Positions 1,876 to 29,500 of a DNA stretch of 64,000 nucleotides are shown in pieces. The notes under the pieces were generated by a model. It saw only the letters and a list, made by a program, of their open reading frames with translations, was not told where the DNA came from and made no database searches. Location: positions 62,001 to 126,000 of IMG/VR virus record IMGVR_UViG_3300044972_002389, one strand, 5' to 3'. A program made the translations under genes and the position numbers. Positions within the stretch are counted from its first letter, which is position 1, and the number at the start of each line of letters is the position of its first letter.

Positions 1876-1897
1876 ATTATATTATAAGGAAAAAGTA

Positions 1898-13888: not shown

Positions 13889-14168
13889 GGCTGCACTCAA
13901 AGCAAGGATACATTTTTATAGATCTTTGACTCAAAGATCTAAATGGATTGTAATGTTTTTTTTGGAGATTTTAGGTACAGCCAGCATACTGCTGGCTGTC
14001 GCCGTTTAAGCCTTTCAAATATTACCTTTGAGCACATTGTATTTGTTTTGGTTGTTTGGCAGTGTAGCCTTGACCATCAGCAGTATTTTGCGTAAGAATC
14101 TATTACTCGCTGTAATGATGTTGTTTTATACAGGGTTGAATTTATATGGATTATGGAGTTTTGGATGA
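13878..14168 (+). pseudogene. Small membrane-protein gene with an in-frame TAA
   Basis: GTG 13878 frame gives hydrophobic FFLEILGTASILLAVAV, TAA at 14007-14009, then AFQILPLSTLYLFWLFGS...LYGLWSFG to TGA 14166-14168, which overlaps the polymerase ATG as ATGA. Confidence 0.65.
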
Positions 14169-16921
14169 CGTATGTTGATGCTATTTTGGAGAAAGACAAA
14201 CACTGTATTCAAGTTGTGGAGCGTGTAAACCACAAACGAGTCTACAACACATATCCCAGCAAATACGTAATGTATTTTCCCAGTGAGCGTGGAAAATACA
14301 CTAGCATTTATGGTGAACGGCTGGATAAATTTGAAACCAATCGTTGGGAAGAGTTTCAAAGAGAGTGTCGCTTGGTTCCAAAAACACAACAATATGAAAG
14401 TGATAGCAATCCCATTTTCCGTTGTTTTTATGAACATTACAAAAATACAGCAAGTCCACAGTTGCATGTGGCGTTTTTTGACTTGGAAACTGATTTTGAT
14501 CCTGATCGGGGCTTCTCGTCAACTGACGAGGCGTTCAATCCCATTACAGCAGTATCTGTATATTTGAGTTGGCTGGGCAAAAACTTTACTCTTGTCCTCA
14601 AACCCAAAACACTCACAGTAGAGCAAGCATCAGCAGTTGTGGACAAATTTGAAGACACTGTGCTGTGTAGCAATGAAACTGAGCTATTGGATGTGTTTCT
14701 CACCCTCATTGAGGATGCAGATGTTCTCACAGGTTGGAATTCAGAGGGTTATGATATTCCCTATTTGCACAATCGTATCATTCAAATTTTGAGTAAGGAG
14801 CACACTAAAAGGCTGTGTCTCTGGAACAAATTTCCCAAGAAAAGGGAGTATGAAAGCTATGGCAAGCCCACTATTACTTTTGATCTAGTGGGCAGAGTCC
14901 ATCTTGACTATCTGCAACTGTACCGCAAGCATACCTATCACGAGATGCACAGTTATCGACTGGACTTTGTGGGCGAGTATGAAGTGGGCGACAAGAAGAT
15001 AGCTTACGAAGGCAGCTTGGACAAGCTCTATAACGAAGACTTTGAAAAGTTCATTGCCTATAACAGGCAAGACGTTATGCTGTTGGTGAAAATTGATCGC
15101 AAGCTGAAATTCATTGATCTAAGCAATGATCTAGCACACACAAACGGAGTGTTGATCCAAACAACAATGGGGTCAGTACAGCTTATTGACAATGCCATTA
15201 CTAACGAAGCACATGATCTTGGCTTATGTGTTCCTACTCGACGTAGAGACAATCCTGAAATCATGAAAGACGATCAGGGTGAAGACATTGAGCCCAATGG
15301 TATTGCTGGTGCATATGTGGCTGACCCAGTTGAAGGCATGCACAAATGGATTGGCGGTGTAGACATCAACAGTCTATATCCCAGTGCTATTCGAAGTTTG
15401 AACATGAGCAAGGAAACAGTAGTGGGGCAAATCCGCCCTGTGGGTAATGATCGTTTGATTCAACACAGGATGCAAAAGGAAAAACGCACTTTTGCTGACA
15501 GTTGGAACGAGATGTTTGGCATTATTGAGTATAACCAAGTGATGAATAGGGAAATGGTTATGCTGACTGTGGACTTTGAAGACGGCACCACTGTGGAACT
15601 CAGTGCTGACGAACTGTATCAATGGATTTTTGAAAATCCCAAAAAGCAAATGACGCTCAGTGCCAATGGCACTATTTTTGATCTCAACAAGGAAGGTGTG
15701 GTACCAGGCTTGCTGGCCCGCTGGTATGGTGAGAGAAAGGAGTTGCAGGCAGAAGCCAAAGCATGTTTCAAAAAAGCTGATGAAGAACCTAATCCCTCTA
15801 AGAAGAGTGAGTATCAAGAAAAAGCTGATTTTTATGACAGAAGGCAGTTGATTAAGAAAATTTTGCTAAATTCACTTTATGGAGCTATCGGAAATTCTAG
15901 CTCATCGTGGTTTGACAACCGTATTGCACAAAGTACTACTTTAACAGGTAGATGTATCGTCAAACACATGGGTAGTAAGATCAATGAGGTAATATCAGGG
16001 AAATATCACTACAAAGGTGATGCTGTCATATATGGCGACACCGACAGCATTTATTTTAGCGCATATCCAGTAATGAGCCAGCTTGAAGACTTCAAAAGCT
16101 TTGATTGGAGTCGTGAAGCAGTGGTGCAACTGTATGATCAAGTTGCAGACATCACTAACCAAAGCTTTCCTGGATTTATGAAACAGGCATTCAATGTACC
16201 TGAATCCAGGAGTGTGATCAAAGCTGGCCGTGAACTAGTAGCAAGCCATGGATTGTTCATTACCAAAAAACGGTATGCTGTGATGATCTACGACAAAGAA
16301 GGCAAGCGAAAGGATGTAGATGGCAAGCCAGGTGAGATCAAAGTTATGGGGCTTGATCTCAAGAGAAGTGATACACCAAAACCAGTCCAGGACTTCTTGA
16401 GTGAGATTTTAACTTTGGTTTTGACTGAGGTTGACAAAGACAGCATTTTCACGCGCATCAAGGAGTTCCGCACAGAGTTCAGCCAATGGCCCAGCTGGGC
16501 AAAAGGCAGCCCCAAAAGGGTGAATAACCTTACTCAATATGGCATGATTAAGAAAGCTCAGGAAAGCGTTGACCTCAACAAAGACACTGGGAAAAGAAAA
16601 ACTATTCCGGGCCATGTCCTTGCGAGCCTAAACTGGAACCTATTGTGTGAGATCTACAACGATTATGGATCAATGCGAATTCAAGACGGGCAAAAGGTGA
16701 TTGTCTGTAAGCTGAGATCAAACCCTTTGGGTATGACATCTGTTGCATACCCTGTAGATCAACTGTATCTTCCTGATTGGTTCAAGTCTATGCCTTTTGA
16801 CAACGCTCTTATGGAGGCCACAATTTTGGACAAGAAACTGGAAAACTTGTTGGGTGTATTGCACTGGAATCTTGAAGATGCCAAAAACAACGAAACTTTT
16901 GACAGCATGTTTAGTTTTTGA
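14165..16921 (+). CDS. Family B DNA polymerase (T4 gp43-like) with 3'-5' exonuclease
   Basis: ExoI FFDLET, ExoII GWNSEGYDIPY, ExoIII YNRQDV, DINSLYPS, KKILLNSLYG, YGDTDS, KKRYA; start MTYVDA at 14165; no intein seen. Confidence 0.97.
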   Translation: MTYVDAILEKDKHCIQVVERVNHKRVYNTYPSKYVMYFPSERGKYTSIYGERLDKFETNRWEEFQRECRLVPKTQQYESDSNPIFRCFYEHYKNTASPQLHVAFFDLETDFDPDRGFSSTDEAFNPITAVSVYLSWLGKNFTLVLKPKTLTVEQASAVVDKFEDTVLCSNETELLDVFLTLIEDADVLTGWNSEGYDIPYLHNRIIQILSKEHTKRLCLWNKFPKKREYESYGKPTITFDLVGRVHLDYLQLYRKHTYHEMHSYRLDFVGEYEVGDKKIAYEGSLDKLYNEDFEKFIAYNRQDVMLLVKIDRKLKFIDLSNDLAHTNGVLIQTTMGSVQLIDNAITNEAHDLGLCVPTRRRDNPEIMKDDQGEDIEPNGIAGAYVADPVEGMHKWIGGVDINSLYPSAIRSLNMSKETVVGQIRPVGNDRLIQHRMQKEKRTFADSWNEMFGIIEYNQVMNREMVMLTVDFEDGTTVELSADELYQWIFENPKKQMTLSANGTIFDLNKEGVVPGLLARWYGERKELQAEAKACFKKADEEPNPSKKSEYQEKADFYDRRQLIKKILLNSLYGAIGNSSSSWFDNRIAQSTTLTGRCIVKHMGSKINEVISGKYHYKGDAVIYGDTDSIYFSAYPVMSQLEDFKSFDWSREAVVQLYDQVADITNQSFPGFMKQAFNVPESRSVIKAGRELVASHGLFITKKRYAVMIYDKEGKRKDVDGKPGEIKVMGLDLKRSDTPKPVQDFLSEILTLVLTEVDKDSIFTRIKEFRTEFSQWPSWAKGSPKRVNNLTQYGMIKKAQESVDLNKDTGKRKTIPGHVLASLNWNLLCEIYNDYGSMRIQDGQKVIVCKLRSNPLGMTSVAYPVDQLYLPDWFKSMPFDNALMEATILDKKLENLLGVLHWNLEDAKNNETFDSMFSF

Positions 16922-18988: not shown

Positions 18989-19014
18989 TGGGCACCCCAC
19001 AGTGCCCATTTTTT
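18989..19014 (+). terminator. Rho-independent terminator
   Basis: TGGGCAC-CCCACA-GTGCCCA followed by TTTTTT. Confidence 0.75.
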
Positions 19015-19025
19015 GGAGACTGCTT

Positions 19026-19556
19026 GTGCCAGTTGAACACGAACGCAAAATGCTCCTGCGACCTGAAAGCCCGCAGGAGCTACTACGACATTTGAAACGC
19101 CAACCCCTTGTGCAAACCTTTGAAATAACACAGGGTTATATCAACAAAAGTGCAAGAATTCGACATGTGGTACCACACAATGGTGATGCAGAAACGCATT
19201 GGTTCACTTTCAAAACCAAGGTTACTGGAAATACAGTGGAGATCGAAACAGAAATTTCAATCCACGACTATCACAAACTTTTCTTGATAGCTAAACCCGT
19301 AATCCACAAAACTCGCTGCAAGTTTCAAGAAGGGTTGAACTGTTGGGACGTGGATTTTTTCAAAAATCCCAAAAGCGGCGACATTTATTTGAGCATGGCA
19401 GAAGTGGAAATGCCAGAATTTGAGTTAGACCTTCCTGAGGTTCATCCTCTCTTACAGGAGAATTTTTGGCGCTGGATTGACGCAAACGACAAGAGGTTTC
19501 AGAACAAGAATCTTAGTAACTATAAAAAAGTTTTGATGAACCTGAAAGGTCTATAA
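19026..19556 (+). CDS. CYTH-domain protein (adenylate cyclase/triphosphatase-like)
   Basis: EHERK, ITQGY, ARIR, EIETEI, IHKTR, WDVDFF, MAEVE; GTG start after ggag SD. Confidence 0.85.
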   Translation: MPVEHERKMLLRPESPQELLRHLKRQPLVQTFEITQGYINKSARIRHVVPHNGDAETHWFTFKTKVTGNTVEIETEISIHDYHKLFLIAKPVIHKTRCKFQEGLNCWDVDFFKNPKSGDIYLSMAEVEMPEFELDLPEVHPLLQENFWRWIDANDKRFQNKNLSNYKKVLMNLKGL

Positions 19557-20344
19557 TGCCAAACAGCAAATATCGTAGCATCTTCATAAGCGATACGCAT
19601 CTTGGTAGTCGTGCATGCCAAGCTGAGCTACTTGTGGAGTTTTTGAAACACAACTCCTGCCAAAATCTATACCTCGTTGGTGACATATTTGATTTGTGGA
19701 AATTGAAAAGCAGCAAATTCTGGCCACAAACACATAGCAATGTGGTTCGAAGAATTCTCACTGCGGCCAAGAGAGGCACACAGGTGAGATATGTTTTAGG
19801 TAATCATGATGAGTACCTTCGAGCATGGATTCCAGACATACACACTTTTGGCAACATTGAGCTGGGCAATGCCTTTGAACATCACTCTGTTCATGGGCAG
19901 AGATTTTTGGTAACACACGGTGATTTGTTTGACGGTGTAATTCGATATCACAAATGGCTTAGCTTGATGGGCGACAAAGCACACAGTTTTTTACTGTGGT
20001 TGAACACACATTTGAATCATATGCGCCGGTTTTTTGGAAAAGATTATTGGAGTCTAAGTTCATACCTTAAAACAAACACGAAACAAGCTGTTGCATTTAT
20101 CACCAAATACGAGCAACATGTAGTACAATATGCTCGGGACGAAGCATTTCATGGAGTAATTTGTGGCCATATTCATTCTCCATCGTTGAAAACGTTTGAG
20201 GATGGGTTTGTGTATATGAATTGTGGTGATTTTTGTGAAACTGTGTCAGCTTTGGTTGAAAACTTTGATGGCTCAATAGAGCTACTGGTTTACGACACTG
20301 AAACAAAAAGTATGATGACGAAAAACACATGGAGCCTTGAATGA
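19556..20344 (+). CDS. LpxH-like metallophosphoesterase, resembling the PlcP phospholipase C clade
   Basis: YRSIFISDTHLG.R.CQAE, LYLVGDIFD.W, GNHDE, HGD.FD, ICGHIH, YMNCGDFCE; directly upstream of an Agt-like GT4. Confidence 0.85.
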   Translation: MPNSKYRSIFISDTHLGSRACQAELLVEFLKHNSCQNLYLVGDIFDLWKLKSSKFWPQTHSNVVRRILTAAKRGTQVRYVLGNHDEYLRAWIPDIHTFGNIELGNAFEHHSVHGQRFLVTHGDLFDGVIRYHKWLSLMGDKAHSFLLWLNTHLNHMRRFFGKDYWSLSSYLKTNTKQAVAFITKYEQHVVQYARDEAFHGVICGHIHSPSLKTFEDGFVYMNCGDFCETVSALVENFDGSIELLVYDTETKSMMTKNTWSLE

Positions 20345-21333
20345 GACTTGTGATTGTTGATGACAACTGCCAAGACCAAGTGAATGGTGTTGTAACTACA
20401 ATGAATGCAGTGAAAAAACAAATGTTTTCTCGAGGCATACAGAATCTCATTCACATCACTCCTGATCAAATGATGTCTATGCCTGCATTGGTATATCCAG
20501 GTGCTCGCATACCATTGAATTTTTGGAATTTGAAAAAAAGAATAGAGGCGTATGAACCCACACACTTGCACATTTGTACAGAAGGTGTGCTGGGCTTAAC
20601 TGCTAGGCAATTTTTTCAAAACAAAAATTGGCGCTACACAACTAGCTTTCACACAAGATGGGATCACTATCTCAAGGAAAAATTTGGTGTGCCGGCCCTC
20701 AAAACCATGAGGTATCTCAAATGGTTTCATCAAAATAGTGCAGCAACTTTGGTCAACACTCCTACTATGCAAAGAGAGATGGTGTCGCTTGGCCTGTCTC
20801 AAGCCATCACATGGTCACGGGGAGTCAACACCCAACTGTTTCAATTTAATGACCGCAAGTGTGACACCAAGCCCACATTGTTGAGTGTTGGTCGAATCAG
20901 TGCTGAGAAAAATTTAGAGGTGTTTTGTAGCCTATCAGCAGAAAAATACAATCTAGTGTGTGTTGGTGATGGCCCTGATCTCAAGCGGTTACAGAACAAA
21001 TACCCCTGGGTGACATTTACTGGGCAATTGAGCGGTAAGCAACTGGTACAGCAGTTCCAAAATGCTGACTGCTTTGTTTTCACCAGCAAAAGTGACACGT
21101 TTGGGTTGGTTATGATTGAAAGCATGAGTGTTGGTACTCCTGTTGCAGCATTTCCTGTGCAGGGTCCAATAGATGTTGTAGATGATGGGGTGACTGGTGT
21201 GCTAAATGAGGATATTCAGACAGCTATCTCGCAATGTTTGACATTGAGTCGAAAAACTGTTTTTGAAGGCAGCAAGCGATGGAGTTGGGAAAAAACAACT
21301 GATATCTTTGTTGATACGCTGGTACCCAAATGA
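20341..21333 (+). CDS. GT4 glycosyltransferase, resembling Agt glycolipid synthases
   Basis: QVNGVVTT, HICTEG.LG, TTSFHTR, SRGV, VGRISAEKNL, VGDGP, DTFGLVMIESM..GTPVAAFP. Confidence 0.88.
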   Translation: MRLVIVDDNCQDQVNGVVTTMNAVKKQMFSRGIQNLIHITPDQMMSMPALVYPGARIPLNFWNLKKRIEAYEPTHLHICTEGVLGLTARQFFQNKNWRYTTSFHTRWDHYLKEKFGVPALKTMRYLKWFHQNSAATLVNTPTMQREMVSLGLSQAITWSRGVNTQLFQFNDRKCDTKPTLLSVGRISAEKNLEVFCSLSAEKYNLVCVGDGPDLKRLQNKYPWVTFTGQLSGKQLVQQFQNADCFVFTSKSDTFGLVMIESMSVGTPVAAFPVQGPIDVVDDGVTGVLNEDIQTAISQCLTLSRKTVFEGSKRWSWEKTTDIFVDTLVPK

Positions 21334-21557
21334 AACATAAAAAAACCATTCCATCAAATTTTCCCACTCTCAAATGTGTTGCATGCGGCACAAGCTGTGA
21401 GCCTTACAGGAAATACGTTTGTGACAATGATGGGGCAGTAGTCCATACTCAAAGTGACATTTGGCCAGAATATTTCCGTGACATGGGGACCACCCGTATT
21501 GAGTTTTGTAGTGCACAATGTGGCCTCAAATATTGCACAGTAAATCAATTGGTGTAG
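21330..21557 (+). CDS. Small Cys-rich (zinc-binding-like) protein
   Basis: CVAC near the N-terminus and EFCSAQC near the C-terminus. Confidence 0.55.
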   Translation: MKHKKTIPSNFPTLKCVACGTSCEPYRKYVCDNDGAVVHTQSDIWPEYFRDMGTTRIEFCSAQCGLKYCTVNQLV

Positions 21558-21613: not shown

Positions 21614-21985
21614 ATGACAGAACCAACTACAAGAAAAATCTACGTGACTTTTCAACGTGAAGGGATTCACAAGTATCCAGCAGCTGGAACTGACCCCTCC
21701 CTTGCAGATGTAAATTTTCTTCAATATCCGCATAGGCACATGTTTCATTTCAAGGTTGGAATTGGCGTCAATCACCTAGACCGAGACATTGAATTTATCA
21801 TTTTCAAGCGTTGGCTGGAAAGTCTCTATGGTGATGGTGTGATCCAACTGGATTTCAAAAGCTGCGAGATGATCGCCGAAGACCTCTACGCCCAAATCTC
21901 TGCTCGCTATCCAGGTCGTGCAGTGAGCATTGACGTTAGTGAAGATGGTGAGAATGGGGCTGTGCTAGCCTGGGACGCTGCATAA
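21614..21985 (+). CDS. T-fold QueD paralogue with LxxxHRHxF signature (DpdL-like)
   Basis: FLQYPHRHMFHF, DRDIEFI, SCEMIA and VSEDGENGA; lacks the canonical QueD C-x3-HGH motif; two genes upstream of dpdA. Confidence 0.8.
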   Translation: MTEPTTRKIYVTFQREGIHKYPAAGTDPSLADVNFLQYPHRHMFHFKVGIGVNHLDRDIEFIIFKRWLESLYGDGVIQLDFKSCEMIAEDLYAQISARYPGRAVSIDVSEDGENGAVLAWDAA

Positions 21986-22000
21986 CCACCAAGGATTGCT

Positions 22001-22062
22001 ATACAAAGTATTTGAGCGCCAGGAGATCGAGATAGGATTGTGCTGGCTCAAATACTTTGTAT
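22001..22062. repeat. Perfect 17-bp inverted repeat with a 28-nt spacer
   Basis: ATACAAAGTATTTGAGC (22001-17) and GCTCAAATACTTTGTAT (22046-62). Confidence 0.9.
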
Positions 22063-22155
22063 TGGCGATAACCTTATAATTTTCAATGCTATAATTGTCA
22101 AAAACTCCTGTGGTTTATATACTATCTCTATTAGAGAATATTTGAAGGATCAAAA

Positions 22156-23244
22156 ATGCCCAATGTATTTGTATGGCCTATCGAGCCATTGGATAATCGC
22201 TACACCCAACAATGGTATCACGAGATTCCGTTGCGGCTCCAAGAAATAGTTGGAAATGCAGCAAAAGTAATCCAACTTGATGGGGTCCAAAACACTACAA
22301 GCACCACATCTGGTGCATTTTTGAATTTCAGCGACACCAACAGATGGAAAAGCACTCAACTGGTTGAGTTTCTCAACAAACATGATGCTGGAGAAACAAC
22401 TCCAAATGATGTGCATTTGTTCACTGACGCTTGGAATCCAGTGATTCTGCAAGTCAAGTATATGAATGATCTCATGGGATATAATTGGAACATACAAGGT
22501 TACTGGCATGCTGGAGCATACGATCCCACTGATATCCTTGGATATAAAATGAGCAAACCGTGGCCCTGGCTAGCTGAGCAGGCACTGTTTCATGCCTGCG
22601 ATGAGAATTGGTATGCAACAGATTTTCATAAAAAAATGTTTTTGAGCAATCTGGGCATCAGCAATGAATATCATCACAAAGCCAAAACTAGTGGGCAACC
22701 ACACTCTGCTATTGTCAAACAAATGCAAGATATTATGCAGGACAGCCGAGAGAGGAAACAGGGCGTTATTTGGCCACACCGTTACAATCCAGATAAGCAG
22801 CCTGAAATTGCTGAAGATCTCTCCAACAGCATGAAACAGCCTTGGTGTATTACACAAAAAATGAATCTCAACAAAAGCAGTTATTACGAAAAGCTGGCTG
22901 ACTGCCAAGTAATTTTTTCCTGTAGCTTGCATGAAAACTTGGGCATCAGTGTAATGGAAGCTGTGCTGGCAGATGTGATCCCAGTGCTGCCCAATCGGTG
23001 CAGCTACAGCGAAATGTATCATCCTGATTTTCTCTATCCCAGCAACTGGACTCAAGATTGGGAAAGTTATCAAACACACAAACAACAATTGACTGAATTT
23101 ATTCAGTACAGATTGAATCACCCCAAAAAGTTCAGTAGGCAGTTGGAAAAGCAAAAGAAAGTGCTCTTACAAAAATATCTTTCAGCTAGCGTAATGTTTG
23201 AAAACATCAGCAACACAGTTGCTAGATCAACCACAGTAAAGTAA
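22156..23244 (+). CDS. GT-B fold glycosyltransferase within the deazaguanine cluster
   Basis: LFTDAWNP, YWHAGAYDP, WPHRY.PDKQPE and SLHENLGISVMEA (E-x7-E) with PVLP...SY.EM. Confidence 0.8.
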   Translation: MPNVFVWPIEPLDNRYTQQWYHEIPLRLQEIVGNAAKVIQLDGVQNTTSTTSGAFLNFSDTNRWKSTQLVEFLNKHDAGETTPNDVHLFTDAWNPVILQVKYMNDLMGYNWNIQGYWHAGAYDPTDILGYKMSKPWPWLAEQALFHACDENWYATDFHKKMFLSNLGISNEYHHKAKTSGQPHSAIVKQMQDIMQDSRERKQGVIWPHRYNPDKQPEIAEDLSNSMKQPWCITQKMNLNKSSYYEKLADCQVIFSCSLHENLGISVMEAVLADVIPVLPNRCSYSEMYHPDFLYPSNWTQDWESYQTHKQQLTEFIQYRLNHPKKFSRQLEKQKKVLLQKYLSASVMFENISNTVARSTTVK

Positions 23245-23253
23245 GATATATCT

Positions 23254-24912
23254 ATGACAAAACTTTCCAGCCCCAACCCACATTTGAAAAAAATTGATCA
23301 AAACATGCAACCTGTGGTGGGTAGAGACATGTGGACCACCAACAAGGACTATGCTATTTTTCTTCCTTCAATCTCAGCGATCTATGTGCGACTAGTAAGT
23401 CAGCCCAACGCTCGCACAGTCAAGGGGCTGCCGGGTGGATTGCAGGATTTGGACTTTCTGCAAACCAATACCAACTTATTTTATTATCCCACTGCACTCT
23501 ACAGCAGCGGTCACAGTTATTGGGATCCTGCTCAAAGTGATATCCAAGAAGCTATGGTGCAAAAGCGAGACAAAAACGCCTCAGTAATTGTGGGCGACAG
23601 TGGTGGTTATCAGATTGCTACTGGCGTTCTCAAATGGCCTTGGCAGAAAAAAGAAAAGCAAACTGATCAAGACTGGATGAAGGACAAAGACGCCATTAGG
23701 ATGAAAATCCTACGCTGGCTTGAACACACTTGTGACTACAGTATGGTATTAGATGTCCCCACAGGCAGCTTGTTGAAGTTTGGTAACGATCCCATCACAG
23801 GTGAGAACCTACATCCTGGGGTTAAGAACTTTAGAGACTGTCTTGAAAGCAGTATGGAGAATCACAACTTTTTCATCAAAAATCGTCGGGAAGGTAGTAC
23901 ACAATTTTTGAATGTGTTGCAGGGGCGCAATCAAGAAGAAGGTGACATTTGGTGGGACGTTGTGAAAGATCTTCCTTTTGAAACCTGGGCATTCAGTAAT
24001 GTGCAAGCCAGCAACTTTGCTATAAATCTCCGTCGGATCATTATCATGCGAGATGGCAAGTATTTGGATAACAGAGATTGGATCCATTATCTAGGCAATG
24101 GCAAAATCAAGGCAGGCTGCGCTCTTACTACACTTCAACGAGTGTGGAGAAAGCACATCAACGAGCGTACAACTCTCAGTTACGATGCAGCAAGTCCTTT
24201 TGTGAACGTAGCAAAAGGCAACATCTACTACAGTTGGGAAGTAAGTCCGCAAAGCATTGCATATAAAAACAACTCGTTGCCAGACAAAAAAGAGCTTAAG
24301 GGCAGTCAAGAACTGTTTCAAGACTGGATCAATCGCCACAATCAAAAACATGCTGTTCGCGAAAGCAGCATTGGCAAGCGGATCACCATTGGTGATATCT
24401 GTGTCAAAGGTTATGAAGATCTCAATTTCAAAAAACAAGCTTTTTCACAAAAAGAGTTTGAAAGCTTGTTGTATCAACAAAGCTTGGAAGGCGTTCATGG
24501 CGAGAAGTTTCGCTACAGTGATGAATACAAACATTATCTTATGCATGAGCACACTGACCACGGCAGCGGCATGTTTGATTGGGGCAAGAAAGAGTTTAAG
24601 GACCATGAAAAGTATCAGGTCAAATGGCCCAGCAGCATGGATGGTCTCAGCTATGTGCTGGGCATGAGCCACAATGTTGAGCTTCATATTGAAGCTATTC
24701 AACATGCATGTGCAATGCAAGACCTGCCAATGGAGGAGAGGAAACATCACATCAGCGAAGACTTGATTGAATTTGCTGGGGGACTTTGTGAAGAGATCTT
24801 CACTAGTGAAAAACCCATGCAACTGATTGAAAAACATTCTGCTATGTTAGCCAAAATCACAGGAATGAACGCTGATAACAACATTGTCATGGATTTTGAT
24901 GAATTTGAATAG
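23254..24912 (+). CDS. dpdA: DpdA-like DNA base-exchange transglycosylase (TGT fold)
   Basis: TGT motifs IVGDSGGYQI, MVLDVP, NVLQG, IHYLG, SYDAASPF; next to folE and a T-fold gene. Confidence 0.8.
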   Translation: MTKLSSPNPHLKKIDQNMQPVVGRDMWTTNKDYAIFLPSISAIYVRLVSQPNARTVKGLPGGLQDLDFLQTNTNLFYYPTALYSSGHSYWDPAQSDIQEAMVQKRDKNASVIVGDSGGYQIATGVLKWPWQKKEKQTDQDWMKDKDAIRMKILRWLEHTCDYSMVLDVPTGSLLKFGNDPITGENLHPGVKNFRDCLESSMENHNFFIKNRREGSTQFLNVLQGRNQEEGDIWWDVVKDLPFETWAFSNVQASNFAINLRRIIIMRDGKYLDNRDWIHYLGNGKIKAGCALTTLQRVWRKHINERTTLSYDAASPFVNVAKGNIYYSWEVSPQSIAYKNNSLPDKKELKGSQELFQDWINRHNQKHAVRESSIGKRITIGDICVKGYEDLNFKKQAFSQKEFESLLYQQSLEGVHGEKFRYSDEYKHYLMHEHTDHGSGMFDWGKKEFKDHEKYQVKWPSSMDGLSYVLGMSHNVELHIEAIQHACAMQDLPMEERKHHISEDLIEFAGGLCEEIFTSEKPMQLIEKHSAMLAKITGMNADNNIVMDFDEFE

Positions 24913-24932
24913 CAATAACACAATTTTTGTGT

Positions 24933-24940
24933 TATAAATA
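24933..24940 (+). promoter_or_regulatory. T4-type late promoter TATAAATA upstream of folE
   Basis: Exact consensus, followed by a 75-nt structured leader. Confidence 0.7.
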
Positions 24941-25015
24941 GTCTGCTACATTACGGTAGCAAATTGGTGGAAACACCCGTTGTGCATAAACGACAGATGC
25001 TTTGAAAGGAAAGAT

Positions 25016-25696
25016 ATGAGCTATAATCGCACAAAATGTGATCCTGAACTGGGTCGCAAAGTACATGAATACCTAGTTTCCAAAGGGGTTGAAACCCCAA
25101 CAGTGGAAAATTCCCTAAGCCGCACAGACAAAATTGATATTATTGAACGCAAGTTCAAGGACATCATGGAAACAATGGGCTTGAATCTATCAGATGATAG
25201 TTTGGCTGAAACGCCGACACGAGTGGCTCGCATGTTTATCCAGGAACTTTTTTGGGGTCTTGATTGGGAAGCTTTCCCCAAGTGCACCACTGTTGCCAAC
25301 AAAATGGGCTATGATGAAATGGTGTGTGAACGAAATGTCACTGTCAAAAGTGCCTGCGAACATCACTTCATTGTGATTGATGGTGTAGCAACTGTGGCTT
25401 ATATTCCCAAAGAAAAGGTATTGGGCCTAAGCAAGATCAATCGAATTGTCGAATACTTTAGCCGCCGACCACAAATTCAAGAGCGTTTGACTGAGCAGAT
25501 CTTTCATGCAATGGAATATATCCTGGAAACCGATAGCATTGCTGTCGTCATTCACGGCAAGCACTATTGCGTAAGTCATCGTGGCGTTGAAGATGATTGC
25601 AGCAGCACAGTTACCAGCAAGCTGGGTGGTGCGTTCAAACAGGATCCCAGTGCTCGTGCTGAATTTATGAAGATGGTTGACTTGACCTCTCTCTAA
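25016..25696 (+). CDS. folE: GTP cyclohydrolase I
   Basis: LAETPTRVARMF, VKSACEHHF, GLSKINRIVEYFSRRPQIQERLT, HYCVSHRGV, RAEF; aaggaaag SD. Confidence 0.95.
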   Translation: MSYNRTKCDPELGRKVHEYLVSKGVETPTVENSLSRTDKIDIIERKFKDIMETMGLNLSDDSLAETPTRVARMFIQELFWGLDWEAFPKCTTVANKMGYDEMVCERNVTVKSACEHHFIVIDGVATVAYIPKEKVLGLSKINRIVEYFSRRPQIQERLTEQIFHAMEYILETDSIAVVIHGKHYCVSHRGVEDDCSSTVTSKLGGAFKQDPSARAEFMKMVDLTSL

Positions 25697-25735
25697 TACA
25701 ACAGTTATTGTAACAGAGAATTTTTAGGTCAAAAT

Positions 25736-26020
25736 ATGAAAATCATCAACAGTAGATATAGAGAGTGGAATGTGTTGCCCGAGAGTGTTCGGGCAATACT
25801 CATTCACAATCAATTACTCCTTAGCTTCGAAGAGCTTTACAAGCCATCCAACCAACGTTATGAACCCAGTTATGAACTGTTGTTCAATTGGTGTGTGGAA
25901 AATTGCACCAATATTTGGTCCACAGAAAAAATCAGCTATGAGAGTTTTCGGTTCAGTTTTTGGGCTGTGGAAGATCAAGCTCGTTTTATAGAGTTTTTGC
26001 AATCGCCCAGAGGTTCCTGA
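25736..26020 (+). CDS. Small hypothetical protein, probably of the 'F..E.D...F' family
   Basis: LFNWCVENC...FSFWAVEDQARFIEFL. Confidence 0.55.
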   Translation: MKIINSRYREWNVLPESVRAILIHNQLLLSFEELYKPSNQRYEPSYELLFNWCVENCTNIWSTEKISYESFRFSFWAVEDQARFIEFLQSPRGS

Positions 26021-26475
26021 TGGCCTCTAATATTTTTAAGGTAACCAGTGTCTGTCAAGGCAGTGTAACCGGTATCACAGTGAATAACCTTGGATCAGGT
26101 TACACGGTTGGTACGTTACTGACATTTGGTAGCAGTAATGCCAGGCCTACTCAAGCATTGCGAGTTGACAATGACTATGGCGAAACCATCTTAAGCATCA
26201 GCATACAAGGTGAGGTCACTTGGCATCAAAACCATCCCACTAAGGCAGCATCTAAGTTGGTAGACAGTTTGCAGAACTGCATTGACATAAAAGCCGCTGG
26301 GGAAGTAGCTATAGCAAGAAGTTATCTACAAGGGGTTAAAAAGTGTTTGAGGATAGCTAAACAAGTTTCCCATGAGGACCTGATTAGGCCATTGGAAACA
26401 GAAGTTGAGCATAGAGAAGGGAAACTCACTTGGCAGGCGTTAAACAACAGTTTGGAGAATCAAAATGACACATGA
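26020..26475 (+). CDS. Hypothetical protein
   Basis: ATG overlaps the previous stop as TGATG; the N-terminal VTGITVNNLGSGYT resembles a repeat motif of phage structural proteins. Confidence 0.6.
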   Translation: MASNIFKVTSVCQGSVTGITVNNLGSGYTVGTLLTFGSSNARPTQALRVDNDYGETILSISIQGEVTWHQNHPTKAASKLVDSLQNCIDIKAAGEVAIARSYLQGVKKCLRIAKQVSHEDLIRPLETEVEHREGKLTWQALNNSLENQNDT

Positions 26476-27046
26476 AACCAGTAAAGCTGTTATGAGAAGG
26501 CTCTCTGACAGCAGATTTATTACTCGATATTTCGTAGGCAATGGCATTGACATTGGTGCTGGGGATGACCCAGTCAGCAATTACAAAGATTTTTTTCCAG
26601 GAATGCAGCAGGTGAGAAATTGGGACCTACCTGATGGTGATGCGCAGTTGATGGCAGGTGTAGCTGACAACAGTTTTGATTGGTTACTCAGCAGCCATTG
26701 TCTTGAGCACATGAGAGACCCTACAGAAGCTATGAGAAACTGGAGCAGAATTTTGCAACCAGGTGGGCATATGGTCCTATTGGTTCCAGATGAAGACCTT
26801 TATGAACAAGGGGTTTTTCCCAGTCGTTTCAACTGGGATCACAAAACTACTTGGACAATTCAAAAAAATCTCAGCTGGAGTCCTGTTTCTGTAAGCTGCA
26901 CAAGTTTCCTAGCCAACTTTCCCGAACTCACTATCTTGAAGCTTGAGCTTTTGGATGCCAGTTATCGATACCATATTCAAAATCAAGATCAAACACTGAC
27001 ACCCATTGGTGAATCAGCTATCGAAATCATTCTTAGGAAAAAGTGA
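26465..27046 (+). CDS. Class I SAM-dependent methyltransferase
   Basis: GNGIDIGAGDDP (motif I), WDLPDGDAQ, SFDWLLSSHCLEHM, ILQPGGH. Confidence 0.88.
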   Translation: MTHETSKAVMRRLSDSRFITRYFVGNGIDIGAGDDPVSNYKDFFPGMQQVRNWDLPDGDAQLMAGVADNSFDWLLSSHCLEHMRDPTEAMRNWSRILQPGGHMVLLVPDEDLYEQGVFPSRFNWDHKTTWTIQKNLSWSPVSVSCTSFLANFPELTILKLELLDASYRYHIQNQDQTLTPIGESAIEIILRKK

Positions 27047-27091
27047 CAATCTTGCACGACTCTGGTATAGTTTTGAAATAGTTTTCTTGGG

Positions 27092-27889
27092 TTGATTGTG
27101 CTGAAAAACTTCATAACCTATGCCACTGCTGGTGATATAATATACAGTCTTTGTGCAGTAAAAATCCTTGGGGGTGGCAACATTTACCTCAAATTGGGAT
27201 ACCTTGATGAGTTTTGCCGAAATGTGTTGGGTTGGTACAATCAGCCCTTCACAGGCAGAATAAGTGAAAAAGATTTTCAAAACATTGAAAGCCTGTTGTT
27301 ACACCAAAGTTATTTGCATGAAGTGCAAATCTATACCAACCAGCACATTGATTATGATTTAGCAGCTGAAAATTGGAAATTCATATTACCTTCTGGTTGG
27401 CAAGGTAATCAAACTCAAGCCTATGCCTTGGGACTGGGATGGGATATGACTGACGTTCAATTGCAGCACCAGTTGTTGAGAGAGCCTTGGCTCACACAGG
27501 TTAGCCCAATCCTTATCCCCAATCGACCCATAGTAATCAATCGAACACCTAGACATAGAGACAACAGTGCTACACAAAAATGGATGGATTTTATCAAACA
27601 AGGTCTGTGCAAGCAGGCTGTGTTTGTGGGCACACCTAGAGAACATCAAGAGTGGCAAACAGAGTTCAAGGAGACTATTGACTATTTTCCTACCCTAGAT
27701 CTGTTGCATTTGGCACAGGTAATTCAAGGTTGTGAAATGTTCATTGGCAATCAAAGTGCGCCATTGGCTATAGCGATAGGTTTGGGCAAAAGCTATTGGT
27801 GCGAAGGCAATCGGGATACAAAAACACAAACTCCTCTAGGAGGCGGGGGCGATTGTTGGTTTGACCGCATAAATGGAAATTATTTTTGA
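27092..27889 (+). CDS. GT9 (heptosyltransferase)-like glycosyltransferase
   Basis: AGDIIYSL at the N-terminus and LLHLAQVIQGCEMFIGNQSAP.AIA.GLGK at the C-terminus. Confidence 0.7.
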   Translation: MIVLKNFITYATAGDIIYSLCAVKILGGGNIYLKLGYLDEFCRNVLGWYNQPFTGRISEKDFQNIESLLLHQSYLHEVQIYTNQHIDYDLAAENWKFILPSGWQGNQTQAYALGLGWDMTDVQLQHQLLREPWLTQVSPILIPNRPIVINRTPRHRDNSATQKWMDFIKQGLCKQAVFVGTPREHQEWQTEFKETIDYFPTLDLLHLAQVIQGCEMFIGNQSAPLAIAIGLGKSYWCEGNRDTKTQTPLGGGGDCWFDRINGNYF

Positions 27890-28593
27890 TCGGGCAACAC
27901 ATGTATGGACTGCTGGTTGTTTACAACAACAATTTCTCAGAACTTTCAAAAATAACCTTGGACAAAAACAAAAAGCTGTATGCTCAGAGACACAATTATC
28001 ATCTGTTTGAAAAAACCACTTGGACCAGTCACTTTGACAGAATCCATGCGGTGTTGGAACTTTTTGACACACACCCACATCTCAGTTGGCTTTGGTATAC
28101 TGATACTGATGTTTTGATCACCAACTTCAAAACAACCATACAAGAAAAAACTAGTGACACACATGATTTACTCATCTCAACTGATGTAAATGGCCTCAAT
28201 ACAGGCAGCATTTTATTTCGTAACTCAAGTCAGTGTCGGTCATTACTGCACGAGTTATTGAAAGTGGAAAAAGAAGCTTTGCAACATTGGGACTCAGAAC
28301 AGTGGGCATTGAATCAGTTATTTGGGTTCCCCGGCACACACCACCCAAGTTACCCGCAAGGCGAGTCTTTGAAAATTCCACATCCTTGGGACAAAACGAT
28401 TCAAGTTGTGCCTCAACGAATGTTAAACAGCTATGATTACAACCTATATCCTTATATACCAAAACCTGCCTTGGACAAACTGTTGACAGATGGCTCATGG
28501 CAGCCAGGCGATTGGGCTGTGCATTTTCCTGGTGTAAGTGAATCAGAAAAAATAAATTTGTGCAACAGTTGGCAAAACAAAATACTGTTGTAA
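27886..28593 (+). CDS. GT34/GMA12-like GT-A glycosyltransferase
   Basis: KKLYAQRHNY, WLWYTDTDVLITN (DxD), D.NGLNTGSIL, EQWAL, DWAVHFPG. Confidence 0.75.
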   Translation: MIGQHMYGLLVVYNNNFSELSKITLDKNKKLYAQRHNYHLFEKTTWTSHFDRIHAVLELFDTHPHLSWLWYTDTDVLITNFKTTIQEKTSDTHDLLISTDVNGLNTGSILFRNSSQCRSLLHELLKVEKEALQHWDSEQWALNQLFGFPGTHHPSYPQGESLKIPHPWDKTIQVVPQRMLNSYDYNLYPYIPKPALDKLLTDGSWQPGDWAVHFPGVSESEKINLCNSWQNKILL

Positions 28594-28611
28594 CTGCCAA
28601 AGGACAAAAAA

Positions 28612-29484
28612 TTGAAAGTATATGATTGTTTTACTTTTTTCAATGAGTTAGATCTACTTGAAATACGCCTTGAAGAGCTATGGGACGTTGTTGACTATTT
28701 TGTGTTAGCTGAATCAAATGTTACACATACTGGCATGTTCAAGCCCTTGTATTTTGATCTAAACAAACAACGCTTTGAAAAATATGCCCAGAAAATTCGT
28801 CACATTGTTGTTGATGACATGCCTGGCGGTGAAGACAACCTTTGGTTCAGAGAAAATCATCAACGCAGATGTCTTGCTCGAGGACTAGGAGACAAAAGCC
28901 CTGATGATTTGATCATTGTAACTGATGCCGATGAAATTCCTCGAGCATCAGTAGTTTCTAGCATAAAACATGATAGTCAGCACACTCGTTGGATTTTGTT
29001 TGCTCCACAGTATTTGTATAAATTAAATTACATGAGAATCAAAACCACAAATGGGGTAGATTGGCAAGCTGGTCCAAGTATTATTGTCTCAAAGTCTCAA
29101 GACTTTACTGACCCTCAAACAGAACGAACATTTACGTTTCCATGGGTTGGGTTGCCTGATGGCACAGCCTTTGTTGCGCATGGAGGTTGGCATTGGAGCT
29201 CATTGGGAAACAATCAGCATTGTATTCAAAAGATCAACAGTTTTGTTCATACAAATGAGAATATACCTGAAATAGTCGAAAACTTTGACATTGACAGATT
29301 TATAGCCACAAAAGGTAGCCATCACACCCCAGGACAGTTTTTTGAAACAGTGGAATTGAACAACTATTTTCCCAATTTTGTCTTATCCAATGCACAAAAA
29401 TTCTCGCAACATGTTGCACCTGGGTTAGGTGTCAAAACAAGTGATATCTATCCTTTTGATACCCAACACACTTACAGAACATAA
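28612..29484 (+). CDS. GT17 (beta-1,4-GlcNAc transferase)-like glycosyltransferase
   Basis: VYDCFTFFNELDLLEIRL, VDYFVLAESN.TH.G..KPLYF, ENHQR, VTDADEIP, GGWHWS. Confidence 0.88.
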   Translation: MKVYDCFTFFNELDLLEIRLEELWDVVDYFVLAESNVTHTGMFKPLYFDLNKQRFEKYAQKIRHIVVDDMPGGEDNLWFRENHQRRCLARGLGDKSPDDLIIVTDADEIPRASVVSSIKHDSQHTRWILFAPQYLYKLNYMRIKTTNGVDWQAGPSIIVSKSQDFTDPQTERTFTFPWVGLPDGTAFVAHGGWHWSSLGNNQHCIQKINSFVHTNENIPEIVENFDIDRFIATKGSHHTPGQFFETVELNNYFPNFVLSNAQKFSQHVAPGLGVKTSDIYPFDTQHTYRT

Positions 29485-29500
29485 CAAGGGAGAAATAAAA

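What the first reader, a model, noticed from the sequence alone, without database searches (positions are those of the whole stretch)
19556..21333. Phage-encoded plcP-agt-like pair: possible membrane lipid remodelling to free phosphate
Seen: LpxH-like phosphoesterase and GT4 overlapping by ATGA, within the replication block. Known: in phosphate-starved Alphaproteobacteria and marine heterotrophs, PlcP cleaves phospholipids to diacylglycerol and the neighbouring Agt-type GT4 makes glycolipids; both proteins show the motifs of these clades as I recall them. Inference: the phage mines host phospholipid phosphate for its large genome while keeping the membrane intact, or alters the membrane against superinfection. 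I do not know of this as a characterised phage auxiliary module.
Basis: partly seen in the sequence, partly recalled or inferred. Interest (0 to 1): 0.75.

Follow-up and report, generated by a model that had tools for sequence, protein, structure and literature searches.

The report
Phage copy of bacterial lipid-remodelling operon
A giant lake-water phage carries intact, strongly conserved copies of the two bacterial genes (plcP and agt) that swap phosphorus-containing membrane lipids for sugar lipids. Hundreds of other viral contigs carry relatives, which points to a phosphorus-related viral gene that the papers I could search do not describe.

Summary
ORF 19556-20344 (262 aa, metallophosphoesterase) and ORF 20341-21333 (330 aa, GT4) overlap by ATGA.

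The phosphoesterase is not LpxH:
- It scores 47 bits against a cut-off of 134.
- It has His where LpxH has its substrate-binding Arg.
- A careful tree separates it from LpxH at 100/100.

It belongs to the PlcP/LpxH2 paralogue clade. In 63 of the 80 closest bacterial loci, SAR11 among them, a full-length homologue of the phage GT4 lies within 2 kb downstream, in 62 of them on the same strand. This is the plcP-agt operon arrangement.

The GT4 keeps every residue shown by mutagenesis to matter in SAR11 GTcp (catalytic dyad, UDP-sugar motifs, diacylglycerol contacts).

Both genes are under strong purifying selection (dN/dS 0.03 and 0.08). They stay paired across diverged jumbo phages of about 400-490 kb. 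At least 573 IMG/VR stretches encode relatives of the phosphoesterase.

The phage recurs in 19 lake metagenomes. No paper in the searchable library describes phage plcP or agt.

The enzymology is inferred from homology. The benefit to the phage (phosphorus supply or membrane alteration) is untested. No Pho box lies near the pair.

A triphosphate-tunnel enzyme is translationally coupled upstream. A 7-deazaguanine DNA-modification cluster lies downstream.

The parts
19556..20344 (+). PlcP-type (LpxH2-type) Mn-metallophosphoesterase, 262 aa; predicted phospholipase C that makes diacylglycerol from phospholipids
   Evidence: Pfam Metallophos. NCBIfam LpxH scores 47 bits against a cut-off of 134. 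All seven metal ligands are conserved: D13, H15, D43, N83, H121, H205, H207. It has His84 where LpxH has Arg, and a 68-aa aromatic-rich insertion. A careful tree places it in the PlcP-type clade at 100/100. dN/dS is 0.03.
20341..21333 (+). Agt/GTcp-type GT4 glycosyltransferase, 330 aa; predicted diacylglycerol glycosyltransferase that makes glucosyl- or glucuronosyl-diacylglycerol
   Evidence: Pfam Glyco_transf_4 plus Glycos_transf_1. It is 32-40% identical over its full length to the glycosyltransferases beside bacterial plcP. H104, S159, R160, D252 and W316 align with GTcp H104, T162, R163, D256 and W320, and the motifs read GRISAEKN and FTSKSDTFG (PMC8231724). dN/dS is 0.08.
19026..19556 (+). 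CYTH / triphosphate-tunnel metalloenzyme-like protein (176 aa from GTG 19026; the mechanical ORF starts at 19002). It is translationally coupled to the phosphoesterase. Whether it belongs to the module is uncertain.
   Evidence: Weak Pfam CYTH hit (E 3e-4). ExExK and the other tunnel residues are conserved. The AlphaFold model (pLDDT 82) best matches the inorganic triphosphatase NE1496 (Foldseek E 1e-7). dN/dS is 0.05. It sits next to the pair only in this phage clade and is absent from L185, L186, L094 and the bacterial loci.
21330..21557 (+). Small Cys-rich (zinc-ribbon-like) ORF, 75 aa, overlapping the GT4 stop by four bases. It is poorly conserved and probably not part of the module.
   Evidence: Coordinates. 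Sub-threshold zf-FCS hit. Only 52% amino-acid identity to the close relative in which its neighbours are 89-93% identical.

Best explanation
The two overlapping genes are a phage-borne copy of the bacterial PlcP-Agt membrane lipid-remodelling operon. The first product is a PlcP-type manganese metallophosphoesterase. By homology it cleaves the phospho-headgroup from host glycerophospholipids and leaves diacylglycerol in the membrane. The second is an Agt/GTcp-type GT4 enzyme. By homology it transfers glucose, galactose or glucuronic acid from a UDP-sugar onto that diacylglycerol, giving a phosphorus-free glycolipid. The bilayer therefore stays intact while its phosphorus is released as soluble phospho-headgroups. 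Host phosphatases would then have to free the phosphate. In bacteria the operon is switched on by PhoB under phosphate starvation. In the phage it sits without a Pho box in a long same-strand array behind the DNA polymerase gene, so it is probably expressed on every infection. The most likely benefit is extra phosphorus for replicating a genome of about 400 kb in phosphorus-poor lake water. Shown here: homology, paralogue assignment, conserved catalytic and lipid-binding residues, operon synteny, purifying selection, and distribution in viral contigs. Inferred: the substrates and products, the timing of expression, and the benefit.
For: 1. Not LpxH. NCBIfam LpxH scores are 47 and 37 bits against cut-offs of 134 and 190. 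Beta- and gammaproteobacteria that carry a homologue of the phage gene also carry a separate true LpxH (213-293 bits), while the homologues themselves score 33-51 bits. Alphaproteobacteria have only the weak-scoring gene. The careful tree splits true LpxH from the PlcP type at 100/100. All 14 PlcP-type and phage sequences have His after GN, GHIH, and a 68-aa insertion that is 16-22% aromatic. The four true LpxH have Arg, GHTHRP, and 6-11% aromatic residues. This matches the LpxH versus LpxH2 distinction drawn in PMC5016852.
2. Operon homology. In 63 of the 80 closest bacterial loci (44-55% identity; Pelagibacteraceae, Caulobacter, sphingomonads, Burkholderiales), a homologue of the phage GT4 (32-40% identity, full length wherever the locus reaches far enough) lies within 2 kb downstream, in 62 of them on the same strand. 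This is the arrangement characterised in SAR11, Phaeobacter and P. aeruginosa (PMC4796936, PMC8528852).
3. GT4 residues. All residues that mutagenesis showed to matter in GTcp are retained, and so are both UDP-sugar motifs (PMC8231724).
4. Selection and inheritance. dN/dS is 0.03 and 0.08. The pair persists in related jumbo phages, including L186, where its neighbourhood is different. Phage sequences group together in both the phosphoesterase tree and the GT4 tree.
5. Ecology. The stretch is present in full in 19 lake-water metagenomes. The homologue in Pelagibacter phage Mosig sits beside a gene annotated as a phosphate ABC transporter. The genome also carries phoH.
6. Spread. At least 573 IMG/VR stretches encode relatives. 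Of the best 80, 37 have an Agt-like GT4 within 5 kb.
Against: There is no biochemical, lipidomic or infection evidence of any kind. No Pho box lies near the pair, and such matches are not enriched in the window. No pstS was found in the 223 kb available. The link to phosphorus stress is therefore circumstantial. PlcP releases phospho-headgroups, not free phosphate, and I identified no phage phosphatase to complete the step. The host is unknown, so its lipid composition is unknown. The pair lies directly upstream of a DNA-modification cluster that contains several other glycosyltransferases, and this synteny is conserved within the clade. No experimentally characterised PlcP sequence was itself in my trees; the link runs through uncultured SAR11 orthologues and operon synteny. 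The RNA evidence is five short contigs from a related strain, and DNA carry-over is not excluded.
Confidence: 0.65

Rival explanations
1. The chemistry is the same but the benefit is different. The phage converts phospholipids to glycolipids to change the properties of the host envelope rather than to obtain phosphorus. Possible aims are blocking superinfection by other phages, resisting membrane-active agents, or stabilising the membrane through the long latent period of a jumbo phage.
For: There is no Pho box, and the pair sits in an apparently constitutive array next to the replication genes. Lipid remodelling is reported to change phage attachment and resistance to cationic peptides in bacteria (titles and abstracts of PMC9938194 and PMC9804370; PMC8528852). 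No phage phosphatase was found that would finish phosphate release.
Against: Glycoglycerolipids made by Agt on the cytoplasmic side are not obvious phage receptors. The only isolate with context (Mosig) has its gene beside a gene annotated as a phosphate ABC transporter. The phage lives in lake water, where phosphorus is commonly limiting (environment; the limitation is general knowledge).
Confidence: 0.2
2. The pair has been recruited into the neighbouring DNA-modification pathway. The GT4 would glycosylate a modified base or a nucleotide-linked intermediate, and the phosphoesterase would process a nucleotide or sugar-phosphate intermediate.
For: Downstream lie a PTPS/QueD-like protein, a weak GT-B-like protein, a TGT/DpdA-like protein, GTP cyclohydrolase I, a methyltransferase, GT34-like and GT17-like proteins and a radical SAM protein. 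Upstream lie the polymerase and a CYTH-like protein. This order is conserved in the clade, including L185.
Against: Both proteins are full-length orthologues of the bacterial operon pair, which sits in bacterial loci with none of the phage neighbours. The residues that contact diacylglycerol in GTcp are retained in all phage copies examined, with Thr162 replaced conservatively by Ser in some. The lipid-type aromatic insertion keeps exactly the same length. The pair also occurs without these neighbours in L186, L094 and most of the IMG/VR loci. Only 4 of the 80 loci had homologues of the 123-aa and 552-aa proteins nearby, and three of those four are the same phage.
Confidence: 0.08
3. The phosphoesterase is a true LpxH that supports or alters host lipid A synthesis, and the GT4 modifies the lipopolysaccharide core.
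For: Public records name the homologues UDP-2,3-diacylglucosamine diphosphatase. The best NCBIfam and PDB matches are to LpxH.
Against: The scores are far below the curated cut-offs. The Arg that binds the lipid X phosphate is replaced by His (PMC5016852). The protein is separated from true LpxH at 100/100 in the tree. Its closest relatives are in alphaproteobacteria, which had no true LpxH in the two genomes I searched.
Confidence: 0.02

Closest known systems
Bacterial PlcP-Agt lipid-remodelling operon (S. meliloti SMc00171; Phaeobacter sp. MED193; SAR11 HTCC7211 PB7211_983 and PB7211_960/GTcp; P. aeruginosa PA3219-PA3218)
   Same: The gene order is the same: phosphoesterase first, then GT4, tightly coupled. 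The paralogue clade, metal ligands and aromatic-rich insertion are the same. The GT4 has the same catalytic dyad, UDP-sugar motifs and diacylglycerol-binding residues. Identity to uncultured SAR11 orthologues is 46-50% for the phosphoesterase and 35-39% for the GT4.
   Different: The pair is encoded by a lytic-looking jumbo phage, not a cell. No Pho box was detected, whereas the bacterial operons have one (PMC8528852). In this phage clade a CYTH/triphosphate-tunnel gene is translationally coupled upstream. Thr162 of GTcp is Ser here, as it is in many bacterial homologues. The UDP-sugar motifs differ slightly: GRISAEKN for GRVAxEKN, and FTSKSDTFG for FPSxTDTFG.
LpxH (UDP-2,3-diacylglucosamine diphosphatase; PDB 5b49, 5k8k)
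   Same: It has the same metallophosphoesterase core with a helical insertion of similar size, and it is the closest solved structure by sequence (E 8e-4).
   Different: His replaces the substrate-binding Arg80. The insertion has a different sequence and is much richer in aromatic residues. Scores fall below the family cut-offs. It forms a separate clade.
Known phage phosphorus-stress auxiliary genes (pstS, phoA, phoH in cyanophages and pelagiphages)
   Same: The presumed ecological logic is the same: a host-derived gene that eases phosphorus supply during infection in phosphorus-poor water. In Mosig the homologue sits beside a gene annotated as a phosphate ABC transporter.
   Different: It would act on an internal phosphorus store (membrane lipids), not on uptake. 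It comes as a two-enzyme cassette. No Pho-box regulation was detected here.
PlcP-like genes annotated as LpxH in isolated phages (Pelagibacter phage Mosig, Synechococcus phage S-SRM01)
   Same: They belong to the same protein family (48% and 37% identity). Mosig groups near the window's clade in the tree.
   Different: In these isolates the gene is alone, with no Agt-like GT4 next to it. No isolated phage in the collection carries the pair.

Membership tests
PlcP / LpxH2-type metallophosphoesterase | The seven metal-binding residues of the metallophosphoesterase fold | tested here: met
   D13, H15, D43, N83, H121, H205 and H207 are invariant in the alignments. They correspond to the seven ligands listed for PaLpxH in PMC5016852.
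PlcP / LpxH2-type metallophosphoesterase | Belongs to the paralogue clade that is distinct from true LpxH | tested here: met
   The careful IQ-TREE splits the two clades at 100/100. Genomes holding both paralogues show 213-293 bits for true LpxH against 33-51 bits for the other, and the window protein scores 47 bits.
PlcP / LpxH2-type metallophosphoesterase | Catalytic-type His after GN (not the Arg of LpxH), and an aromatic-rich helical insertion | tested here: met
   His84, and a 68-aa insertion with 18% Phe/Trp/Tyr. It has the same length in all 14 PlcP-type sequences examined (description of LpxH2 in PMC5016852).
PlcP / LpxH2-type metallophosphoesterase | Operon with a non-phosphorus-lipid synthesis gene (agt type) | tested here: met
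   ATGA overlap with an Agt-type GT4. The same arrangement occurs in 63 of 80 bacterial loci.
PlcP / LpxH2-type metallophosphoesterase | Pho-box / PhoB control, a feature of the bacterial system rather than of the enzyme | tested here: not met
   No match to CTGTCATNNNNCTGTCAT with up to 3 mismatches lies between 4817 and 43040. The window holds 8 matches against 9 expected by chance. The host's Pho box may differ from this consensus.
PlcP / LpxH2-type metallophosphoesterase | Mn-dependent phospholipase C activity that yields diacylglycerol | not testable with these tools
   Needs an enzyme assay or lipidomics.
Agt / GTcp clade of GT4 glycosyltransferases | GT-B, GT4 domain architecture | tested here: met
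   Glyco_transf_4 (E 2e-11) plus Glycos_transf_1 (E 5e-23).
Agt / GTcp clade of GT4 glycosyltransferases | Catalytic dyad His104-Asp256 | tested here: met
   H104 and D252 align with H104 and D256 of a 334-aa SAR11 orthologue that carries exactly the published residues (PMC8231724).
Agt / GTcp clade of GT4 glycosyltransferases | UDP-sugar motifs GRVAxEKN and FPSxTDTFG, and the Gly-rich motif | tested here: met
   GRISAEKN, FTSKSDTFG and QVNGV. The substitutions are conservative.
Agt / GTcp clade of GT4 glycosyltransferases | Diacylglycerol-binding residues Thr162, Arg163 and Trp320 | tested here: met
   S159, R160 and W316. Ser and Thr alternate at this position among the bacterial homologues too. 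R160 and W316 are invariant in 18 sequences.
Agt / GTcp clade of GT4 glycosyltransferases | More than 25% identity to clade members, whereas the clade is under 25% identical to other GT4 enzymes | tested here: met
   32-40% identity over the full length to GT4s next to plcP. E. coli WaaG and WaaB are so distant that their branches saturate.
Agt / GTcp clade of GT4 glycosyltransferases | Synthesis of glucosyl- or glucuronosyl-diacylglycerol from a UDP-sugar and diacylglycerol | not testable with these tools
   Needs heterologous expression with lipidomics, or an assay with purified enzyme.
LpxH (UDP-2,3-diacylglucosamine diphosphatase) | Score above the curated NCBIfam equivalog cut-off | tested here: not met
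   NF003743 gives 47.3 bits against 134. TIGR01854 gives 37.3 bits against 190.
LpxH (UDP-2,3-diacylglucosamine diphosphatase) | Arg80 (PaLpxH numbering), which binds the lipid X phosphate | tested here: not met
   His84 occupies that position. All four true LpxH examined have Arg (PMC5016852).
CYTH / triphosphate tunnel metalloenzymes (upstream ORF) | N-terminal ExExK and paired acidic and basic tunnel residues; eight-stranded tunnel fold | tested here: met
   E4, E6, K8, R44, R46, E72, E74, E126 and E128 are invariant in 4 phage sequences. The model has pLDDT 82, and its top PDB matches are the NE1496 triphosphatase and other members of this family. The substrate is unknown.

The most novel reading that the evidence does not exclude
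Phage-driven membrane lipid remodelling is a widespread and so far unrecognised viral strategy. A plcP gene, often with agt, is carried by hundreds of environmental phages; public records of isolates label it lpxH. In a clade of lake jumbo phages of about 400 kb it belongs to the conserved core next to the replication genes, coupled to a tripolyphosphatase-like enzyme. On every infection it strips phosphorus from host phospholipids, and perhaps from polyphosphate-derived triphosphate, to feed synthesis of a very large genome. If so, viral infection would also contribute to the glycolipid signal now read as a marker of bacterial phosphorus stress.
Probability: 0.4. Interest if true: 0.78.

Novelty: new member of a known kind. 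Interest (0 to 1): 0.62.

Why it matters
Phosphorus often limits phage production in lakes and oceans. The known viral answers act on uptake or regulation (pstS, phoA, phoH).

A phage-encoded PlcP-Agt cassette would be a different kind of answer. It would draw on the host's own membrane as a phosphorus store while keeping the membrane intact. By rough textbook figures (my own knowledge), an E. coli-sized cell holds on the order of 10^7 phospholipids. A 413-kb genome needs about 8 x 10^5 phosphorus atoms. Lipid phosphorus could therefore cover a meaningful share of a jumbo-phage burst.

There are two practical consequences:
- Genes labelled lpxH in viral gene catalogues are probably mis-assigned to lipopolysaccharide synthesis.
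- Field measurements of glycolipid-to-phospholipid ratios, used as indicators of bacterial phosphorus stress, could include a signal from infection.

The hypothesis can be tested directly by expressing two small genes.

Tried and rejected
- **Nucleotide search against isolated phages:** no match.
- **True LpxH:** rejected on scores, a diagnostic residue and the tree.
- **Pho box:** none near the pair, and matches are not enriched in the window.
- **Promoter and terminator scans:** not above chance, so no transcription unit can be defined.
- **Rooting the GT4 tree with E. coli WaaG and WaaB:** their branches saturate (length about 10) and one lands inside the ingroup, so the rooting is unusable.
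- **My ORF-picking script:** it produced three garbage rows (L044 and L080, L062). The two phosphoesterase rows were removed for the careful tree.
- **dN/dS against relatives at 47-75% identity:** synonymous sites are saturated, so I fetched a closer relative.
- **PDB sequence searches with the 552-aa, 123-aa and CYTH-like proteins:** nothing found. Atlas and fold searches gave leads instead.
- **Complex prediction for phosphoesterase plus GT4:** 'no answer', which is evidence neither way.
- **The 'Acinetobacter phage MD-2021a' GT4 hit:** it lies on a piece of bacterial chromosome, so it is not a phage homologue.
- **PlcP paper in J Biol Chem 2026:** it gave no residue-level criteria.
- **A biochemical PlcP paper:** none turned up in the searchable library.
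Full report
**Observation**

The window holds two same-strand ORFs exactly as described: 19556-20344 (262 aa) and 20341-21333 (330 aa). The sequence at 20341-20344 reads ATGA, so the first gene's stop overlaps the second gene's start.

Pfam finds the calcineurin-like metallophosphoesterase fold in the first, and the two GT4 halves (Glyco_transf_4, Glycos_transf_1) in the second.

- The upstream ORF (mechanical start 19002, more likely GTG at 19026) ends at 19556 in TAATG, one base into the phosphoesterase start.
- A 75-aa Cys-rich ORF starts four bases before the GT4 stop.

The pair lies 2.6 kb downstream of a family-B DNA polymerase (14153-16921). It sits in a run of same-strand genes from about 4 kb to 37 kb.

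**What the genome is**

The window is part of a 223-kb IMG/VR viral record that CheckV rates 54% complete. That implies a genome of about 400 kb. Syntenic relatives occur on contigs of 409 kb and 462 kb.

The stretch 19002-21557 is present essentially whole in 19 different lake-water metagenome runs. This is a recurrent freshwater jumbo phage. Its host is unknown, and the window contains no tRNA genes.

**Is the phosphoesterase LpxH or PlcP?**

Public records name its homologues UDP-2,3-diacylglucosamine diphosphatase. Four independent tests say that name is wrong.

- *Curated cut-offs.* The two NCBIfam LpxH equivalog models give 47 and 37 bits against cut-offs of 134 and 190.
- *Paralogue comparison.* I searched five bacterial genomes that carry a close homologue of the phage gene. 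The three beta- or gammaproteobacteria each have an additional true LpxH at 213-293 bits, while the homologue of the phage gene scores only 33-51 bits. The two alphaproteobacteria (Caulobacter segnis and a SAR11 genome) have only the weak-scoring gene.
- *Phylogeny.* A careful IQ-TREE of 72 sequences separates true LpxH (E. coli plus three others) from everything else at 100/100. The window's phage clade (12 sequences, 100/100) sits inside the other group. Its sisters are two further jumbo phages (100/97), followed by Mosig plus a Hyphomonas sequence.
- *Diagnostic residues.* The P. aeruginosa LpxH structure paper lists seven metal ligands, a helical insertion domain, and Arg80, which binds the lipid X phosphate where other metallophosphoesterases have a catalytic His. 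It also describes a paralogue, LpxH2, with an aromatic-rich insertion and presumably a different substrate (PMC5016852).

On the last test, the phage protein and all 13 other PlcP-type sequences I aligned have His at that position, GHIH, and an insertion of exactly 68 residues that is 16-22% aromatic. The four true LpxH have Arg, GHTHRP, and 6-11% aromatic residues. All seven metal ligands are present.

**Is the pair the plcP-agt operon?**

A scan of one genome per bacterial species returned 80 best loci with 44-55% identity to the phage phosphoesterase. All those with a named lineage are Alpha-, Beta- or Gammaproteobacteria except one 'Candidatus Kuenenia' assembly. They include many Pelagibacteraceae, Hyphomonas, Caulobacter and sphingomonads.

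In 63 of these loci a homologue of the phage GT4 lies within 2 kb downstream of the phosphoesterase gene, usually within about 100 bases. Identity is 32-40%, spanning query residues 1 to about 329 wherever the locus reaches far enough. In 62 of the 63 it is on the same strand. Several of the remaining 17 loci simply end too soon. None of the phage's other neighbours occurs in these bacterial loci.

This is the arrangement shown experimentally to carry out lipid remodelling:
- SAR11 HTCC7211 plcP complements a Phaeobacter plcP deletion, and its agt makes glucosyl- and glucuronosyl-diacylglycerol in E. coli (PMC4796936).
- P. aeruginosa PA3219-PA3218 is the same pair under a Pho box (PMC8528852).

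**The glycosyltransferase**

The GTcp study defines the Agt/GTcp clade by four features (PMC8231724):
- a His104-Asp256 dyad;
- the motifs GRVAxEKN and FPSxTDTFG, plus a Gly-rich motif;
- the diacylglycerol-contacting residues His104, Thr162, Arg163 and Trp320, all tested by mutagenesis;
- less than 25% identity to other GT4 enzymes.

I aligned the phage protein with a 334-aa SAR11 orthologue that has exactly those residues at exactly those numbers. The phage protein has H104, S159, R160, D252 and W316, with GRISAEKN, FTSKSDTFG and QVNGV. The Ser/Thr alternation at position 159 also occurs among the bacterial homologues. R160 and W316 are invariant in both 18-sequence alignments and D252 in one of them.

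A tree with E. coli WaaG and WaaB as outgroups could not be rooted, because those branches saturate. That fits the reported isolation of the clade. The tree does show the phage GT4s grouping together, in parallel with the phosphoesterase tree.

**Are the genes functional in the phage, and is the pair the unit?**

Against a relative with 89-93% protein identity (L189), dN/dS values are as follows:

| Gene | dN/dS |
|---|---|
| Phosphoesterase | 0.03 |
| GT4 | 0.08 |
| CYTH-like gene | 0.05 |
| Neighbouring 250-aa core gene | 0.035 |

The small Cys-rich ORF is poorly conserved (52% amino-acid identity).

The order CYTH-like, phosphoesterase, GT4 recurs in relatives down to 59%, 46% and 51% identity respectively. 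Two more distant jumbo phages keep the pair but not the CYTH-like gene:
- L185 (485 kb) is otherwise syntenic.
- L186 (493 kb) has the pair in a different neighbourhood.

A 102-kb contig with NAMPT, an NMNAT-NUDIX gene and many small ORFs also has the pair.

Of the first 600 pattern-matching stretches, 573 encode a relative of the phosphoesterase. Among the best 80, 37 have an Agt-like GT4 within 5 kb downstream, and 19 of those start within 400 bases of the phosphoesterase gene. The flanks I sampled carry ribonucleotide reductase and DNA ligase.

Among isolated phages only Mosig (48% identity), S-SRM01 (37%) and three unclassified records have the phosphoesterase, and none has the pair. In Mosig the gene sits divergently beside a gene annotated as a phosphate ABC transporter.

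**Mechanism proposed**

By homology, the phosphoesterase removes phospho-headgroups from host phospholipids, and the GT4 glycosylates the resulting diacylglycerol.

The bacterial operon is Pho-regulated. Here no Pho-box-like sequence lies within 14 kb upstream, and such matches are not enriched in the window. Promoter and terminator scans are uninformative. Expression together with the replication genes on every infection is therefore my inference from gene order alone.

A freshwater metatranscriptome holds five short contigs, 90-99% identical to the window. They lie across the CYTH/phosphoesterase junction, across the phosphoesterase/GT4 junction, within the GT4, and within the next glycosyltransferase-like gene. 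This is a hint that a relative is transcribed, but DNA carry-over is not excluded.

The favoured benefit is phosphorus supply, for three reasons: the genome is very large, the habitat is a lake, and the Mosig homologue has a phosphate-transporter neighbour. The genome also carries phoH, which is a weak indicator. No pstS was found in the 223 kb available.

**The upstream CYTH-like gene**

It has the N-terminal ExExK and the paired acidic and basic residues of triphosphate tunnel metalloenzymes. Its model (pLDDT 82) best matches the inorganic triphosphatase NE1496 of Nitrosomonas.

A phosphate-releasing role would fit the theme, but this family has many substrates. The adjacency is also specific to this phage clade. 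I list the gene as a possible third member only.

**Rival from context**

Directly downstream lies what looks like a 7-deazaguanine DNA-modification cluster carrying extra glycosyltransferases:

| Coordinates | Protein | Evidence |
|---|---|---|
| 21614-21985 | PTPS/QueD-like | |
| 22156-23244 | weak GT-B-like | |
| 23254-24912 | TGT/DpdA-like, with a DSGGYQ motif | |
| 24980-25696 | GTP cyclohydrolase I | |
| 26465-27046 | methyltransferase | |
| 27886-28593 | GT34-like | |
| 28612-29484 | GT17-like | |
| 30148-31029 | radical SAM | |

One could therefore argue that the pair has been recruited to DNA modification. I rate this low (0.08) for three reasons:
- The diacylglycerol-contacting residues and the lipid-type insertion are conserved.
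- The bacterial orthologues have none of these neighbours.
- The pair travels without them in other phages.

**Comparison with the literature, and novelty**

Full-text searches found no description of a phage plcP or agt. The searches combined plcP with phage, auxiliary metabolic genes, lipid remodelling, pelagimyophage, Mosig, S-SRM01 and LpxH. lpxH appears only as a row in a KEGG-based viral gene table (PMC9611531). The Mosig, S-SRM01 and pelagimyophage papers do not mention it. Subscription-only papers are not covered by the library.

The enzymes are of a known kind. A phage-borne version appears to be new and looks widespread, so I rate this a new member of a known kind.

**Limits**

- No experimentally characterised PlcP or Agt sequence could be fetched. 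The link to them runs through uncultured SAR11 orthologues, operon synteny and published residue numbering.
- IMG/VR contigs may include some non-viral fragments.
- Complex prediction for the two proteins gave no answer.
- Activity, substrates, timing of expression and benefit all remain to be shown.

Noticed in passing
window 21614-31029 (+): A probable 7-deazaguanine DNA-modification cluster, unusually rich in glycosyltransferases. It holds a PTPS/QueD-like protein (21614-21985), a GT-B-like protein (22156-23244), a TGT/DpdA-like protein with a DSGGYQ motif (23254-24912), GTP cyclohydrolase I (24980-25696), a methyltransferase (26465-27046), a GT34-like protein (27886-28593), a GT17-like protein (28612-29484) and a radical SAM protein (30148-31029). 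It may encode a glycosylated deazaguanine base, which would be interesting in its own right.
   Followed up: partly
window 4833-8561 (+) and 4800-4817 (-): A 1242-aa protein combines several GNAT acetyltransferase domains with a dCMP/cytidine deaminase domain. The best Pho-box-like match in the window (1 mismatch, GTGTCATATAGCTGTCAT on the minus strand) lies 16 bases upstream of its start.
   Followed up: no
window 375-1451 and 1844-2485 (+): A UvdE UV-damage endonuclease and a serine recombinase/resolvase with an HTH_7 domain. A resolvase in a jumbo phage may mark a mobile insertion or an inversion switch.
   Followed up: no
window 43538-50674 (-): A very long ORF of 2378 aa on the minus strand, in the part of the window where gene orientation reverses. 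Not examined.
   Followed up: no
L001 (Pelagibacter phage Mosig, MT647606.1 93031-94866): In this cultured pelagimyophage the PlcP-like gene, annotated as a putative UDP-2,3-diacylglucosamine hydrolase, is divergently adjacent to a gene annotated as a putative phosphate ABC transporter. No Agt-like gene is present. This would be a cultured system in which to test the idea.
   Followed up: partly
L188 (CAKLQH020000017.1, 'Acinetobacter phage MD-2021a'): This record in the phage collection carries nagZ, prc, bcrC, iscX and ndk around the GT4 hit. It looks like a piece of bacterial chromosome, not a phage.
   Followed up: yes
L008, L011 and L186 (related jumbo-phage contigs): The relatives carry a Thg1-like gene between the polymerase and the module (L008 and L011), an intein in the family-B polymerase gene (L011 and L186), and a Cas12f1-like TnpB gene nearby (L011).
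   Followed up: no
L092 (ENA GROS21 scaffold, 51 kb): This bacterial-looking contig (FecR, Gcw_chp, radical SAM, CHASE2-guanylate cyclase) has a plcP-agt pair that groups with the viral-contig sequences in both trees rather than with the named proteobacterial genomes. It may point to the donor or recipient lineage.
   Followed up: no
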